Positions 28,747 to 35,579 of a stretch of DNA of 64,000 nucleotides are shown here, piece by piece. Origin of the DNA: Podarcis muralis (taxonomy: Eukaryota). The number at the start of each line of letters is the position of its first letter. The stretch's first letter is position 1. The position numbers and the translations under genes were made by a program. Below the pieces are notes generated by a model. That model saw nothing but the letters and a program-made list of their open reading frames with translations. It was not told the origin of the DNA and did not search any database. The stretch lies in contig NC_135659.1 in the NCBI RefSeq assembly GCF_964188315.1, forward strand, positions 101,060,001 to 101,124,000, given 5' to 3'.

Positions 28747-31700
28747 TTACTGCACACCCTCCATCATCTTCAGGAACTCTGCGGGGGGAGACGGAAGACG
28801 GGTCAGTCCCAAGGCAGGAGGGGCCAAGGAGCGCGGACTCCACACACCACAGTCCTGAGCAGCAGGATCTCAAGGGGGCAGTATCCTCACCCAGATCGGG
28901 GCTGGCTGTGACTCTAAACCCCCCCCCCCCCAGACAAAGGGCTCTGGCCAGGTTGCCAAGAGCCCAGAATCGACAGCTGCCAAAGCCCAGGAAGGAAGAG
29001 GGAAGCGTATTTCCATCGAAGCTGGGAATTGATTTACTTGTTTTGATAGATAGATGATTTATTACGATCAGAGACCAGCTTATAAAACACACTTGGGGGT
29101 ACAATCCCAGAAGGAAAGCAAACATTTAAAACAATGTACAACAATAAATTTATAAATGCGATAAGCATATAGACACTTAAAACTTTTAAGATGAGTTACC
29201 ACAGACAGATGACCCAGAGTCACCCATGGAACTGAGTTTGGGGATTTTCTTAACGAACTAGTTTGGGTGGGGGGTGGTCTGCGCCTACAAATCTGTACAC
29301 AGAATCTGGCAATCATCCGGGTTGTCTTATTATCTTTGCCTAACAGAAAAGGGTCCAATTTTTGCTTTTCTGGAAGGTCAGCAAGCCTCACCAGCAGGGA
29401 TTTACTTGTTTGTATATAAAATTCATCTCCTGCCAACCTAGCAGTTCGAAAGCACGTCCAAGTGCAAGTAGATCAATAGGTACCGCTCCGGCAGGAAGGT
29501 AAACGGCGTTTCCGTGCGCTGCTCTGGTTCGCCAGAAGTGACTTAGTCATGCTGGCCACATGACCCAGAAGCTGTACGCCGGCTCCCTCGGCCAATAAAG
29601 CGAGATGAGCGCCGCAACCCCAGAGTCGGTCACAACTGGACCTAATGGTCAGGGGTCCCTTTACCTTTTATATAAAATTCATATTCTGCTTGAGCGGGGA
29701 GTCTGTGTGTGCCTTGAGGGCCCTGCCCAGTAAGGCAGGGAGCCTGTGGGGCTGGTGGAAGGGTCACAGAGCTGGCCGGACACCCCCACCCTCTCCAGCT
29801 CCAAAGAAAGGCTGGCTGACCCACTCACCGTCAAAGTCGATCCGGCCATCGTTGTTTTTGTCGCCGTCCTTCATGAGCTCCTCGATCTCTTCTCCAGTGA
29901 CAGACTCTCCGGATAACTGGAAGATCTCGACCAGCTCCTCTGCATCCAGGAAGCCATCGCCATTCCTGTTTGGGGGGGGGGGGGAGAAGCGTTGAAGGAG
30001 GCAGCCCTGATCTCCTCCTGATCTAAACCCCTCACTGCAGTCTGATCAGAGCCAGGTGTGGGCATCCCAGTTTAAGAAGGCTATCGAGGGGCTGGAACGG
30101 GGGCAGGCGACCCGCTGGGTCCCTTCCAACTCTATGGGAACAGCTGTGGGGTTTCTGCGAGCAAGCGTTGTCTTCTCCTAAGGGGGGTTATGGCTTCTCT
30201 GCTCTCCAATCCTTAAAGTTGGGAAGACCAGAGAAGTACTTTGAAAGGCAAGAAAGAGTCCCTAGGTGTTTCTTGCCAGGGACGAAAGAAGAAGAAGAAG
30301 AATGGAGGATGAAATTAATGGACTATGCAGAACTAGATAAACTAACAGGAAGGATTCGAAATCGGCGGGACCAGAAATTCACAGAAGACTGGCGTAAATT
30401 TACAGACCATTTGAAAAGTAATTGTGATGATCAGACTACGTTTGTAGGTTTGCAAGAAGTTTTGTGAGGTGAATTATTGGCACTATTGCACAAATGGATA
30501 AAAGGGAGGATGGTTAATTAAGATAATTAAAGGCAATATGAATTTAAAAAATGCATAAGAGGTGGTCAAAACGGTGGATCATCAGAGGTGCTGATGGAAG
30601 TCCAAAAAAAGATTGTATAAGTGGTGAAGTTTTGTGGTATGCATTATAATTTATATGTTAAAATTAATAAAAATTATGTAAAAAGAAAGAAACCGTCCCT
30701 AGCAGAGCACCTCCTGCAGATCTTAAAATGCAGCCAGCTTGGAGTGGGAAGAGGTGTTCCTTCAGCCTTGACGCCCTAAAACGGGCCCAGAAGACAAGAA
30801 GCAATGGGTGCAATTGTTCTCAGATATTCTCCCTGCCAGGAAGTCTCCTGCAGAGAGCATTGCAAGAGCCGGCCCTGAAGTAGCAGAGCAAAGATCACTG
30901 GAGCCAAGCTGTCTCTCCAGGAGTGGCCAAGGGTGGCACAGTGGTGCAGAGGCCACCTGCCAAAGGCGATTCAAGGAGCACCCCCAAGCTATGCTCCTGC
31001 TCCTTTGAGGGCAGTGCCACCCTGTTTAGAACAAGATGCCCACCAGCGCCCGGATCGGAGGGCCGATCACCCACAGAGCCTCCATCTTGTCTGGATTCAG
31101 CTGGTTTGTTGGCTGCACAACCGGCATGTGGGGTGGAACCGGGCAGGTGCCCCCTGCCCCACTTCTCTGGATGGAACCAACGTGTGTGTTTTGGATGGGT
31201 TGGCCTGTGGCAGACTGGTGGTGAGGGAAGGCTCCCCACTGGCGTGCCAGGATGAGACTGCATGTGACCTTCTGATTCCACACAAGCACCCCAGGGTTGG
31301 TGACCCCCAACTCTTCCTTCCCCTCCAAGCCTGGCACCAGCTGGGCAGCGACCAAGCAGTGAAGGGAGATGGTGTCTGGGCAGCCAGGATCGCTGGGTCC
31401 CCTGAGGTTCCGGGGGCCCCTTCTGCGCCTTTCACACTTAGCTCAGCCCAGTCCTCTGCCTTTGCAGGGGCAGGAGGAGCCCCTACCCTTTGTGCCCGGC
31501 ATTCGCCTAGTCAGGCTCCTCCTTCCTCAAAAGCTGCCAGTGTTTGCCGGGAGGTGAAAAAGGAGACCGGACAGAATTAGCCTCCAGGTAACAGGAGAAG
31601 AGGCAGCTTCTGTGACAACTGCAGCTCACTCTCTGTTTGGGCTCTGGGTGCGAAAGCCAGCTTTGGGAAGAGCTGCAGGTGGGGAAATCTCAGCTCTGTG

Positions 31701-34700
31701 GTGCCCCAGCTTGGATGGTTGGAGGAGGTAATATTCTCCTTTATCTAAATGCAGGCGAGGACAACAAAGGGTGGCCCACCCCTTCCTGGCTTGCAATCCT
31801 GACCCAGGGAACTCTCCTAGTCTAATCCACATCAACAGACCCAGAGTCCCACAGGCAGAACTTATATACTGACTGCATCTGTAGTCCACCTTTCTCCTCC
31901 AAGGAGCTCCAGGTGGCCTACGTTGTTCTGCTCTTCACCCCACAACAACCCTGTGAGGTAGGTCAGGCTGAGAGGCAGCGACGGGTCACACCCAGGGAGC
32001 TTTACAGCGGAGTGGAGGGAGGATTTGAACCCTGGTCTCCCAGGTCCTCATCCGACACTCCAACCACTATACCACACCACATTTGTTTTGACAATAAGGG
32101 TCGTTTGACGGTGGAGCGGACTCTCCTTCGCTGGAGGCTTTTGTGCAGAGGTCAGGTGTTCACCTGCCAGGGATGCCTTGGCTGCGATTCCTGCGCTGCA
32201 GGGGGTTGGACTAGAGGGCCTTTGGGGGTCCCTTCCAGTTCTGTAGTTCTGTGACTCAATGCCAGTCCAGCTGCCATAAGGAGCTTTGAATGGGAGTCTT
32301 GGCGGAGCATAAGTATCTCTGTGTGTGACCTGAACATTGCCCCAGCTGTTCAGGCCCTTCTCCAGGCAGGGGGGGCTTCTGCTGCCCCCCATCTCAGCCT
32401 CACCTGTCAAAGATGCGGAAGCACTCGGCCAGCTCCTCCTCACTTTTTCCCTTGGCATCCTCTTTCATCTGGCGCACCATCATGACCAAGAACTCCTCAA
32501 AGTCGATGGTTCCGCTGCCTGCAGGGAGGGTCCCCGGGAGAAGGGTCAGGGCTGCCCCCTCCGGCCCCCCCTCAGCCTCCCTTCACCCCCCCCTCCTCAG
32601 ATGCAGCCCCTCCTCACCATCCTCATCCACCTCCTCTATGATGGCGTCCAGCTCCTCTTTGGTGGGCGTCTGCCCCAGCATCCTCATGACGGTGCCCAAC
32701 TCCTTGGTGCTGATGTCGCCGCCACCGTCCGCGTCAAACATGTCAAAGGCGGCTTTGAACTCTGCAGGGGGGAGAGAGAGCGGGGGGGGGGGTTAGGGGG
32801 TGAGCCTGGCAGGAACCAGAGCATGGTTTGGGCCAACATCCAAGTCAGCTCGGAGGTTTCCCAGATCATGCAAGCTCCGAGTGGCAGGGGTTGGGCTGGA
32901 TGACCACTAGGGGTCCCTTCTGGCTACAGTTCTAACTGTTTTCATTCTGTCTAAAGGGCCAAAGGAGGGAATGGGCTTTCCAATGGGCTAAAAAGGATCG
33001 TAGAAAAACCATCTGCCCGCAACGCAGACCCCTCTGCTTTTTAGCCGAAAGGTGTCATTCTATGGAAAACCTCATGGAGCTTCTGCAGGTGGGATCAGCT
33101 CCTTTGGTGGGGGAGGACCCCAAAACAACAACCCCCCCCCCATGCATGCATGCACACAATCCCTGCTCTGCTCAGGCAGAGAATGGAACAGAGAAGAGCA
33201 ACCCCTCCCCAAGTGATAATGCTTCAAACCTCACACAACCCACATGCAGAGGTAGCAGGGAGTCCTTGGCCAGAGGAGGTCTAGGGTGGGGCAAACTGCT
33301 AAGCACAAGGTCAGAACTGCAGGGGGCAGCAAGCCCACACTTAGGGGTAGCAACAACTGCCTCTCAGCCCTGGACCACCCTGATTCCAATTATTCCCCTT
33401 CTGTGTGTGCAGCTGGAGATTCAGGAGCCACCCAAATGAGAGGAAGACGGTTGCTTGGTCGCAATTTAGGGGTCCATTTTGGAGGGGCTTGGCAATATTT
33501 TGGGTGCTAGAAGAGGGGGTGCCTCCCCCTCTCCCCCACCCATCATAGGATCTGTTAATCCTCTGAGCCTCCAAAGCCACTTGTGGAATGGCTGGGCATG
33601 GTTATTAATTCTTACTAGTCTTACATATATATCCAACCTTCCCCCCCTCCAAATAGCTCAAGAGGGTATAAATGGCTTCGCCTCCCACTTTTATCCCTGT
33701 GAGGTAGGTCAAGCCGAGAGGCAGTGACCCAAGGCCACACCCAGAGAGCTTCATGGCTGCGTAGGGAGTTGTACCAGGTCTCTTCCAGGTCCTCGTCCAA
33801 CGCACTAACCACTATACCACACTGTCTCTCAGGGTGCCAGCAAATAAAGTACTAGTTTATGACGTTTTGTGGTTACCCCGCCTTCCTCCCTAGTTGGCCC
33901 ACTTCCAACACAGCCACTTTGCCCCTCGGCCGAGTCAGGGTGCCCGCTGTGCCCGCGCCGCCCAGGATGCCCCTCAACTCACCCGCGATCATTTCCTCAG
34001 TGAGGAAGGACCGGGCTTCCGCCTGCTGGTCCGTCTGCAAGGCAAGGGGAGGAAGTCACCAAGGGAGCAGAGTCCGGCCCAGCCGGGGCCATGCCCAGGG
34101 ATGCCCTCCCCACTCCTGGCTACCTGCAGTCCACTCTGCCATTGCCGCTGCTGCTGCCAACTCCTCCTCAGTTGTTTGCTTCTCTCCCGATACTTTCTTT
34201 CCCCAGCCCACAAATAAGCCCCTTCTCTGGGCATCACCAGAAAGGTGACTGCCAGCCACTGGTGCACCAACCCAACCTTGGGCTTGGCTTGCTCCGCCTG
34301 GCATTCTGCAGGTGGTGCAGCAGAAGGGGGTTCATGGCACCCAACCCTCTGCGGCCGGGCTTGCTAGTGCCAGGCGCTCGCGGCAGGGGGCAGGAGGAGT
34401 GCTGGGATTCCCGTTGTGGCTCCTGCATTGCAGCGGGGTTGGAGTAGATGACCCCGGGGGGTCCCTTCCGATTCCGTAAGAGCATCCCTTGCTCTCGAGA
34501 GGCTGGGTGGCACATCTCCACAAAGGCAGTTGCTTCTTGAGCTGCCCCATGGAAGGCCGTTTGCAGTGCCAAGGTCCCAGTGCCCCCTGGCAGAGGCAGC
34601 CAGCTTTGGCCCCAAGTTGCGCTGCAGCCTCAGGCTCCTTTGGACTTTGCCAGGATTCCTGGGTCCTGAGAGAGGGACCTCCCGGTGGCTGGCCAGAGGA

Positions 34701-35463
34701 GAGGATGGTGCTCCTTGACCGCCGGATGCTATTCTTAGCAGCGCCCACCGGCTGCCTCCTTCTAGGGTGCTCAGCAGGCCGCCAGCCAGCTGCTCCAGCA
34801 CCTGTCGGCTGGCGGATTGGGTTACTCCTTCGAGCCGGGTCTTGCAGCTCAGCGGCCGGCGGGCAGGCAGGGTTCCCGGCCGGTTCTCATGACCGGCGGC
34901 TTGGCTTTCTCCACGGCCATCCGGCTCCATCCTTCGTGTCCTTGGCCAGGCTTGGCGAGGGGTGCAGTGCCCCCCAGGGCAGCCCACCACCCGCCCAGAT
35001 CCAAGCAGATTCCGTATTTGCCCCCATCTCTCTTCCAGCAAAAACCGCCCCCCCCCAACACCCCCAGCCACGGTTGACCTCTCCGCCCTCCCTCTCCACG
35101 GGGGCAGTAATAAAGAAGACCCCATCTCTGCCCCCAGCCTTTTGCCTTGCCCCCGCCCTGCCCCCCCCCCCAGTCTCCCCTGCAGCCTCAGCCAAAGGGC
35201 CACTCCTGCCCTTCGGCCCCACACAGGGCAGCTCCGCCGGGAGCCGTGCTTGTGTCCTGGCCACGTCTCCCGCCACGGTCTGTGCTGGTCCTGGGCCCCG
35301 GCGCCGGCCTGTCCCATCGGACGCGCGAACAACCAGTCCATCTCACCACCTGTGCACGATCCGCGGCCCGGTCCGGCATCCCGGGAGGAGATGTGTCTCC
35401 CACCGTCCTGGGCGCCGCCGTCAAAAATGGGCACACGTGCCCATGTCTTACCATGCTTACCAT
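28747..35463 (-). CDS. TNNC2: Troponin C, fast skeletal muscle, 6 exons (163 aa MVSMTDQQ form or 160 aa MTDQQ form)
   Basis: Minus-strand exons 35463-35452 (or 35463-35461), 34034-33983, 32761-32618, 32518-32404, 29965-29829, 28778-28747. [40 protein letters not shown]...[12 protein letters not shown]...[12 protein letters not shown]...[21 protein letters not shown]; four intact EF-hand loops. Confidence 0.97.
29427..29668 (+). mobile_element. 5'-truncated Sauria SINE
   Basis: 14-bp TSD TATATAAAATTCAT at 29413-29426 and 29669-29682. Confidence 0.9.
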
Positions 35464-35579
35464 GTTGGCAGGAAAGACCCCACAGCAACCCACAGAGAGA
35501 AAGAGACCCGGCGCGTCCGCTCCACTCCACTCCCTGGCGGACGACGGAAGAAAGCTTGTCCGCGGCTCCTGGCAGGGCC

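What the first reader, a model, noticed from the sequence alone, without database searches (positions are those of the whole stretch)
35446..35463. Tandem ATG|GTAAG donors in TNNC2 exon 1: a possible origin of the bird/reptile N-terminal extension
Seen (minus strand): CCAAC ATG GTAAGC ATG GTAAGA, a 9-nt duplication giving two equally good in-frame donors. The first yields M-TDQQAEAR; the second yields [12 protein letters not shown]. Established: mammalian fast TnC begins MTDQQ, while chicken and turkey proteins begin (M)ASMTDQQ and (M)PSMTDQQ. Inference: the extra x-S-M residues are an exonised duplicate of the donor (GTA AGC = Val-Ser), with birds having lost the first GT; this lizard may express both N-helix variants, which could affect Ca2+ regulation.
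Basis: partly seen in the sequence, partly recalled or inferred. Interest (0 to 1): 0.75.

Follow-up and report, generated by a model that had tools for sequence, protein, structure and literature searches.

The report
Duplicated start-codon splice donor in TNNC2
In this lizard's fast-muscle troponin C gene, a 9-base duplication of the start codon plus its splice donor gives two splice sites that RNA reads show are both used, so the protein is made with or without three extra N-terminal residues. The duplication is shared with snakes and monitor lizards but appears unrelated to the similar extension in birds.

Summary
On the minus strand, TNNC2 exon 1 ends in ATG (35463-35461), followed by GTAAGC, ATG, GTAAGA (35460-35446).

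Stranded raw RNA-seq labelled as the same species shows both junctions to exon 2 at 34034. The first donor (M-TDQQ) has 431 and 233 reads. The second donor (MVSM-TDQQ) has 55 and 96 reads, or 11% and 29%.

The same 18 bases occur in Podarcis, Crotalus and Varanus. Their flanking sequence is only 54-79% identical. Anolis, Gekko, turtles and crocodilians have a single ATG|GT unit. So this is a real 9-base tandem duplication confined to some squamate lineages. RefSeq already lists MVSM and M isoforms (X1/X2) for Podarcis and two snakes.

The link to birds is not supported. Birds read ATG NCN TCR ATG|GTAAG, which matches GTAAGC at 0-1 of 6 bases. Their serine uses a different codon family (TCN versus AGC). 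Crocodilians and turtles, the closer relatives of birds, have neither the extension nor the duplication.

Any functional difference between the two proteins is untested and probably small. This is a clean, conserved example of tandem alternative donors, and it is of moderate interest.

The parts
35461..35545 (-). TNNC2 exon 1 in its short form: 5' UTR plus the initiator ATG (35463-35461). Transcript 5' ends fall at about 35534, 35538 and 35545.
   Evidence: RNA-seq depth is confined to 35425-35546, and molecule ends pile up at 35534/35538/35545. Sequence.
35455..35460 (-). Donor 1, GTAAGC. This is the major 5' splice site. When it is used the protein starts M-TDQQ. When donor 2 is used these bases are read as Val-Ser.
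   Evidence: Junction 34034<->35461: 431 reads (X22) and 233 reads (X23), with GT..AG ends.
35452..35454 (-). Second, duplicated ATG. It is exonic only in the long form.
   Evidence: Absent in Anolis, Gekko, turtles and crocodilians.
35446..35451 (-). Donor 2, GTAAGA. This is the minor 5' splice site and gives MVSM-TDQQ.
   Evidence: Junction 34034<->35452: 55 reads from 34 start positions (X22) and 96 reads from 48 start positions (X23), with GT..AG ends.
34035..35445 (-). The part of intron 1 common to both forms.
   Evidence: Zero or near-zero RNA depth. The acceptor ...ccttgcag ends at 34035.
33983..34034 (-). Exon 2 (52 nt): [17 protein letters not shown] plus the first base of Glu.
   Evidence: In 722 and 501 reads the sequence past 33983 continues into exon 3.
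32618..32761 (-). Exon 3 (EF-hand I and part of EF-hand II).
   Evidence: 46/47 identical to chicken TnC.
32404..32518 (-). Exon 4.
29829..29965 (-). Exon 5 (EF-hands III/IV).
   Evidence: Matches lacertid TNNC2 proteins.
28747..28778 (-). Coding part of exon 6, ending in the TAA stop.

Best explanation
In an ancestor of lacertids, snakes and monitor lizards, the nine bases made up of the TNNC2 initiator ATG and the first six bases of intron 1 were duplicated in tandem (shown by outgroup comparison). The pre-mRNA therefore carries two full, non-overlapping, in-frame 5' splice sites 9 nt apart, with identical sequence from -3 to +5. Both are joined to the same exon 2 acceptor (shown by RNA reads). 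The upstream donor is used in about 70-90% of transcripts and gives the mammal-like M-TDQQ protein. The downstream donor is used in about 10-30% and keeps GTA AGC ATG in the mRNA. The first AUG sits in a strong context (A at -3, G at +4), so this mRNA should give MVSM-TDQQ (inferred; no protein data). The 18-base unit has stayed letter-perfect in three deep squamate lineages, which fits constraint on both sites (inferred). The bird M-x-S-M extension is a separate, constitutive event: an upstream in-frame ATG within exon 1 with no donor-like sequence. The resemblance follows from a gene design in which exon 1 ends exactly at the start codon.
For: Sequence. Uniqueness. Both junctions with canonical ends in two raw stranded RNA runs, each supported by many distinct read starts. 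Equal U1 pairing energy. Identical 18-mer in Podarcis L001, Crotalus L002/L003 and Varanus L022. The 27-nt block (CCTGCCAAC plus the tandem) is 27/27 identical while flanks are 54-79% identical. One unit in Anolis L021, where the sequence equals Varanus minus 9 nt, and one unit in Gekko L031, turtles L018-20 and crocodilians L004-6. Public models carry MVSM (X1) and M (X2) pairs in Podarcis raffonei, Crotalus tigris and Pantherophis guttatus, and MVSM alone in P. muralis, Lacerta agilis and Vipera latastei. Bird exon 1 sequences.
Against: There is no protein-level evidence that the MVSM form exists. The tissues of the two RNA runs are unknown. The two runs come from one study, and they carry the same species label as the best DNA holder, but the individual is not shown to be the same. 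The difference between runs (11% vs 29%) is significant on read counts but not on distinct read starts, so regulation is not shown. Anolis does well with one unit, so the second donor is dispensable. The start of the intron is fairly conserved in general (up to 79% between lacertid and Varanus), so some of the conservation may have other causes. Skinks, tuatara, acrodont iguanians and amphisbaenians were not sampled at the DNA level, so the timing of gain and loss is provisional.
Confidence: 0.82

Rival explanations
1. One reading: the bird and reptile x-S-M extensions share one origin, an exonised duplicate of the ATG|GTAAG donor, and birds later lost the first GT.
For: Both extensions are exactly 9 nt, end in Ser-Met and lie directly before GTAAG. 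A single T>C change would turn GTA (Val) into GCA (Ala), and several birds have Ala at that position.
Against: Bird hexamers match GTAAGC at 0-1 of 6 positions. Ser is TCN in all seven bird loci read at this site, from three orders, and AGC in squamates. Crocodilians and turtles have one donor and no such extension (turtles only an extra Thr), and so do Gekko and Anolis. MAFFT aligns the bird upstream ATG within what is 5' UTR in reptiles, without needing a 9-nt gap.
Confidence: 0.04
2. Use of the second donor is splicing noise. Only the M-TDQQ protein matters. The second unit persists because it helps U1 recruitment to the cap-proximal exon, or because of other constraint on the first bases of the intron.
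For: Donor 2 is the minor form. Anolis lost one unit. Rabbit (159-residue) and chicken (162-residue) TnC chains differ by the same length and, from my own knowledge, behave alike in standard assays. Tandem donors of equal strength are expected to be co-used without any regulation (PMC1779574).
Against: 10-30% usage in a very highly expressed gene is well above typical noise. All 18 bases are unchanged in three lineages, including the third codon positions of GTA and AGC, and positions +7 to +15 relative to donor 1.
Confidence: 0.4
3. The minor junction is an artefact, caused by mis-mapping, a paralogue or an allele without the duplication.
For: The 9-nt repeat makes alignments near the junction ambiguous by one base (column 'both' = 1).
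Against: The two junctions differ by 9 nt of retained sequence, with 52-53 nt anchors on the shorter side and 34-48 distinct starts. There is only one TNNC2 gene in the window. An allele lacking one unit would give only the short junction, not the long one. Independent gene models in other squamates have both forms.
Confidence: 0.02

Closest known systems
Tandem alternative 5' splice sites (GYNGYN donors and related close donor pairs; Hiller et al. 2006, PMC1779574)
   Same: Two nearby in-frame GT donors feed one acceptor. Both are used, the protein change is small, and the donors have similar U1 pairing strength, which is the condition that paper links to co-use.
   Different: Here the spacing is 9 nt rather than 3, so the two U1 binding registers barely overlap and each donor keeps a full GTAAG core. 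The pair arose by duplication of the donor together with the start codon, so the long mRNA has two in-frame AUGs. The pair is identical across lacertids, snakes and Varanus.
Bird fast TnC N-terminal extension (M-A/P/T-S-M-TDQQ; chicken TNNC2_CHICK, turkey)
   Same: Three extra residues ending in Ser-Met, encoded at the 3' end of exon 1 directly before GTAAG.
   Different: In the bird models retrieved here the extension is the only annotated form at this junction, and the six extra bases hold no GT. The sequence is ATG NCN TCR ATG, with a single donor and no donor-like hexamer. It is ancestral to crown birds (ratites, Galloanserae, Neoaves). Passerines lost it when the upstream ATG changed to ATT/ATC.
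Other N-terminal variants of vertebrate TNNC2 in public gene models
   Same: Changes of a few residues (one to three in most groups) occur right at the exon 1/exon 2 junction: M[APS]QP vs MP in frogs and salamanders, MPM vs M in sharks and skates, MT-T in turtles, MVR in sheep and takin, MSDQ in Gekko.
   Different: Different routes. Gekko uses an alternative first exon inside intron 1 (L031:9163). Turtles have a duplicated ACG at the start of exon 2. The amphibian, shark and caprine routes were not checked at the DNA level.

Membership tests
TNNC2 (fast skeletal troponin C) orthologue | Protein sequence close to characterised fast TnC | tested here: met
   Exon 3 is 46/47 identical to chicken TnC PDB chains, E about 2e-30. 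Exon 5 hits lacertid TNNC2 at 91-93%.
TNNC2 (fast skeletal troponin C) orthologue | Six coding exons, with exon 1 ending exactly at the initiator ATG | tested here: met
   Exons sum to 483 nt. The same ATG|GT design appears in all 31 fetched loci.
TNNC2 (fast skeletal troponin C) orthologue | Conserved neighbours (SNX21-type PX gene upstream, UBE2C-type UQ_con gene downstream) | tested here: inconclusive
   Seen in the crocodilian, bird and lizard loci. For the window only other readers' notes name SNX21 and DNTTIP1. I did not check this myself.
Tandem alternative 5' splice sites | Two GT donors within about 12 nt, in frame | tested here: met
   GT at 35460 and 35451, 9 nt apart.
Tandem alternative 5' splice sites | Both donors used in transcripts | tested here: met
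   431/233 and 55/96 junction reads in two raw RNA runs.
Tandem alternative 5' splice sites | Comparable donor strength | tested here: met
   Identical from -3 to +5. U1 duplex energy is -8.0 kcal/mol for both. MaxEnt scores were not computed.
GYNGYN (3-nt) tandem donors | Donors 3 nt apart with overlapping U1 sites | tested here: not met
   Spacing is 9 nt.
Homologue of the bird M-x-S-M extension | Nucleotide similarity of the six extra bases | tested here: not met
   0-1 of 6 matches in seven bird loci. Ser is TCN in birds and AGC in squamates.
Homologue of the bird M-x-S-M extension | Presence in lineages between birds and squamates | tested here: not met
   Crocodilians have MTDQQ and a single ATG|GTGAGG. 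Turtles have a single ATG|GTAAGA.

The most novel reading that the evidence does not exclude
The duplicated ATG+donor is a selectively maintained switch, older than about 150 million years (age from my own knowledge of squamate divergence times). It would give lacertids, snakes and anguimorphs two fast troponin C N-termini in regulated proportions, with the VSM extension of the N-helix changing Ca2+ sensitivity or troponin I/T coupling in particular fibre types. That would make TNNC2, which a current review lists as not alternatively spliced (PMC8559874, Table 1), an alternatively spliced regulator in a large vertebrate clade.
Probability: 0.15. Interest if true: 0.55.

Novelty: new member of a known kind. 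Interest (0 to 1): 0.36.

Why it matters
Fast troponin C is usually treated as an invariant Ca2+ switch with no splice variants. A recent review table lists TNNC2 alternative splicing as 'N/A'. This is a small but well-documented exception. Two N-terminal forms come from a duplicated start-codon and donor unit, both are seen in RNA, and the unit is identical in lizards, snakes and Varanus. It is also a clear example of how tandem donors arise by micro-duplication. It further shows how a gene whose first exon ends exactly at ATG keeps changing its protein N-terminus by several routes in different vertebrate groups. It corrects an attractive but unsupported story about the origin of the chicken and turkey extension, which matters to people who use those proteins as structural references. 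The expected physiological effect is small.

Tried and rejected
- **Joined protein not searched.** To reach full-length relatives I queried the open stretch around exon 5 by reference, then used a returned protein id.
- **Wrong frame.** I corrected it.
- **Contig runs uninformative.** The Logan contig runs X1 and X2 held only intronic DNA pieces. All RNA evidence comes from the raw runs X22 and X23.
- **Gecko look-up.** Paroedura isoform X3 (P0175) is not on record, so Gekko japonicus was used instead.
- **Limits on DNA sampling.** Frog, shark, sheep, skink and tuatara DNA could not be fetched, so their mechanisms are inferred from proteins only.
- **Literature.** The peptide strings MVSMTDQQ and similar are not in the paper library. 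One search had a syntax error.
- **Paralogue check.** I looked for a second TNNC2-like gene in the window that could confound read mapping and found none.
- **Third ATG.** The ATG at 35444-35442 is out of frame, has no donor, and is specific to lacertids.
- **Big search not used.** The representative-protein search was not needed.

Full report
**What is there.** On the minus strand the window carries a single fast skeletal troponin C gene, TNNC2. Its coding exons are 35463-35461, 34034-33983, 32761-32618, 32518-32404, 29965-29829 and 28778-28747. Together they make 483 nt, which is 160 codons plus a stop. Exon 3 is 46/47 identical to the chicken TnC chains 1ncx/4tnc. In the same search the chicken chains are 162 residues and the rabbit chains 159, with the match shifted by three residues. 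The pattern occurs once in the window and in none of 100 shuffles.

**Are both donors used?** One read-laying run was allowed. I used window:33900-35700 with two contig runs and two raw, stranded RNA-seq runs carrying the same species label as the best DNA holder.
- The contig runs held only intronic DNA pieces and say nothing.
- The raw runs cover only exon 1 (35425-35546) and exon 2, on the strand expected for a minus-strand gene.
- Junction 34034<->35461 (first donor) has 431 reads in X22 and 233 reads in X23.
- Junction 34034<->35452 (second donor) has 55 reads from 34 distinct starts in X22 and 96 reads from 48 distinct starts in X23.
- Both junctions have GT..AG ends and 52-53 nt on the shorter side.
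- The second donor therefore accounts for 11% and 29% of junction reads.
- The difference between runs is significant on raw counts (Fisher p = 2e-10) but not on distinct starts (p = 0.22). I do not claim regulation.
- Transcript 5' ends pile up at 35534, 35538 and 35545.

The two donors are identical from -3 to +5 and give the same computed U1 duplex energy, -8.0 kcal/mol. Similar donor strength is the condition that Hiller et al. (PMC1779574) associate with co-use of tandem donors.

The short form reads M-TDQQAEAR. The long form keeps GTA AGC ATG. Its first AUG has A at -3 and G at +4, so it should give [12 protein letters not shown]. That last step is inference, as no protein data were available.

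**Is it a duplication, and how old is it?** Genomic loci were fetched through exact protein look-ups.
- The 18-mer ATGGTAAGCATGGTAAGA is identical in Podarcis raffonei (L001), two Crotalus assemblies (L002, L003) and Varanus komodoensis (L022).
- Among the window lacertid, the snake and the varanid, the 27-nt block CCTGCCAAC plus the tandem is 27/27 identical. The 50 nt on either side is 54-79% identical.
- Anolis sagrei has CCTGCCAAC ATG GTAAGA CCACGGG, which is the Varanus sequence minus one 9-nt unit.
- Gekko japonicus has ATG GTAAGC GCGG.
- Three turtles have ..GCCA[AG]C ATG GTAAGA GCC.
- Three crocodilians have ..GCCAAA ATG GTGAGG.

The first ATG of squamates sits in the same ..GCCAAC context as the single ATG of the outgroups. 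So the extra nine bases are an insertion that repeats the ATG plus donor.

On the molecular squamate tree (my own knowledge) the event predates the split between Lacertoidea and Toxicofera, and Anolis lost one unit secondarily. On the older morphological tree no loss would be needed. A 9-nt tandem repeat is easily lost by slippage, so I give this little weight as a phylogenetic character.

**The isoforms are already in public gene models.** Protein searches returned several relevant models.
- MVSM (163 aa, 'isoform X1') and M (160 aa, 'isoform X2') pairs exist for Podarcis raffonei, Crotalus tigris and Pantherophis guttatus.
- MVSM models alone exist for P. muralis, Lacerta agilis and Vipera latastei.
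- I found no paper that discusses them. The peptide strings are absent from the library.
- A 2021 review table lists TNNC2 alternative splicing as 'N/A' (PMC8559874).

**The bird question.** M-x-S-M is ancestral for crown birds. The proteins are MASM in chicken, quail, kiwi, tinamou and pigeon, MTSM in ostrich/emu, stork and penguin, and MPSM in turkey, falcons, eagles, swift and woodpeckers.

At the DNA level exon 1 ends as follows, each time followed by GTAAG:
- Six anseriform loci: ATG GCG TCA ATG.
- Ostrich and emu: ATG ACT TCA/TCG ATG.
- Three piciforms: ATG CCG TCA, ATG CCT TCC or ATG CCT TCG, then ATG.

These hexamers match GTAAGC at 0-1 of 6 positions, below the 1.5 expected by chance. 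Serine is TCN in birds and AGC in squamates. Passerines read ATT/ATC CCC AAG ATG|GTAAG. They have lost the upstream ATG and encode MTDQQ. MAFFT places the bird upstream ATG within what is 5' UTR in reptiles, without needing a 9-nt gap, although the 5' UTR alignment between birds and reptiles is weak. Crocodilians and turtles lack both the extension and the duplication.

The simplest reading is two independent events. Birds gained a constitutive upstream in-frame ATG. Squamates gained a duplicated ATG plus donor that is alternatively used. The terminal Met is shared because exon 1 must end in ATG in both. The shared Ser is coincidence. An independent donor duplication in stem birds that has since been erased cannot be excluded, but nothing supports it.

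**Wider pattern (proteins only unless stated).** The exon 1/exon 2 junction of TNNC2 varies repeatedly across vertebrates.
- Frogs and salamanders have M[APS]QP (X1) beside MP (X2).
- Sharks, skates and chimaera have MPM beside M.
- Teleosts have MP or M.
- Turtles have an extra Thr from a duplicated ACG at the start of exon 2 (DNA).
- Sheep and takin have MVR, which starts with Val as an exonised GTG would.
- Gekko X1 (MSDQ) comes from an alternative first exon inside intron 1 (DNA, L031:9163).

The 'extension' is therefore neither specific to birds and reptiles nor produced by a single mechanism.

**Function.** The N-helix of TnC influences the Ca2+ affinity of the N-lobe (review text, PMC5033975). 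However, mammalian and avian fast TnC differ by the same three-residue length and are used interchangeably in the field (my own knowledge). Anolis also lost the second donor. I put about 40% on the minor form being tolerated noise. I put about 15% on a physiologically meaningful, maintained two-isoform system. The remainder is a weakly selected state in between.

**Verdict.** The duplication and dual usage are supported. The link to birds is not supported. This is a new, well-conserved member of the known class of tandem alternative 5' splice sites, and it is of moderate interest.

Noticed in passing
L021:3001-3020 (Anolis sagrei) versus L022:3001-3030 (Varanus): Anolis has exactly one 9-nt unit, followed by the same CCACGGG as Varanus. 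On the molecular squamate tree this is a secondary precise deletion. On the old morphological tree (Iguania basal) the indel would need no reversal.
   Followed up: partly
Proteins P0200 (Ovis aries X1) and P0208 (Budorcas): Caprine TNNC2 models start MVR-TDQQ. Val-Arg right after Met looks like an exonised GTG AGG donor, which would be a possible parallel to the squamate case. DNA not checked.
   Followed up: no
Proteins P0007/P0213, P0215/P0214, P0216/P0217, P0036, P0026: Frogs and salamanders have paired models M[APS]QP-TDQQ (163 aa) and MP-TDQQ (161 aa). The two extra residues end in Gln (CAG/CAA), which suggests tandem acceptors 6 nt apart. DNA not checked.
   Followed up: no
Proteins P0094, P0109, P0116, P0127 versus P0102, P0113, P0114: Chimaera, skate and shark TNNC2-like models come as MPM-TEQQ ('X1' for the skate and both sharks, 162 aa) and M-TEQQ (160 aa). 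This is another extension ending in Met at the same junction.
   Followed up: no
L031:9160-9180 (Gekko japonicus): An alternative first exon lies inside intron 1: gccacc ATG TCG GAC CAG|gtagaa. It explains the Gekko X1 N-terminus MSDQ-TDQQ. The canonical exon 1 at L031:8001 has a single ATG|GTAAGC.
   Followed up: partly
L018-L020, exon 2 start (about 4770, 4737 and 4654): Turtles have ..ttgcag ACG ACG GAC. A duplicated Thr codon at the start of exon 2 gives MTTDQQ (161 aa).
   Followed up: partly
L010-L017:2991-3003 (passerines): Passerines read ATT/ATC CCC AAG (L015: CCC ACA) ATG|GTAAG. The upstream bird ATG is mutated, so their TnC starts MTDQQ like that of mammals.
   Followed up: partly
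window 29829-29965 (exon 5): Within an otherwise near-identical protein, exon 5 differs from Podarcis raffonei at 4 residues in one stretch ([16 protein letters not shown] versus EIFRLSGEPVSEEEIE). Lacerta and Zootoca differ again. Gene-wide DNA identity to Podarcis is about 92%, so the window is from another lacertid lineage.
   Followed up: partly
window 35535: All RNA reads covering this base (50 and 38) show C instead of T on the plus strand, a few bases from the transcript 5' ends. It is either a polymorphism or a cap-related addition.
   Followed up: no
Protein P0049: An nr entry labelled 'EF-hand domain-containing protein [Streptococcus pneumoniae]' (225 aa) is a vertebrate fast TnC (..[18 protein letters not shown]..). 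It is most likely host contamination in a bacterial assembly.
   Followed up: no
Protein P0219: The same 163-aa amphibian-type sequence (MAQPTDQQQDAR...) is filed under both Ambystoma mexicanum and Ailuropoda melanoleuca. This is a probable contaminant or mislabel in the panda record.
   Followed up: no
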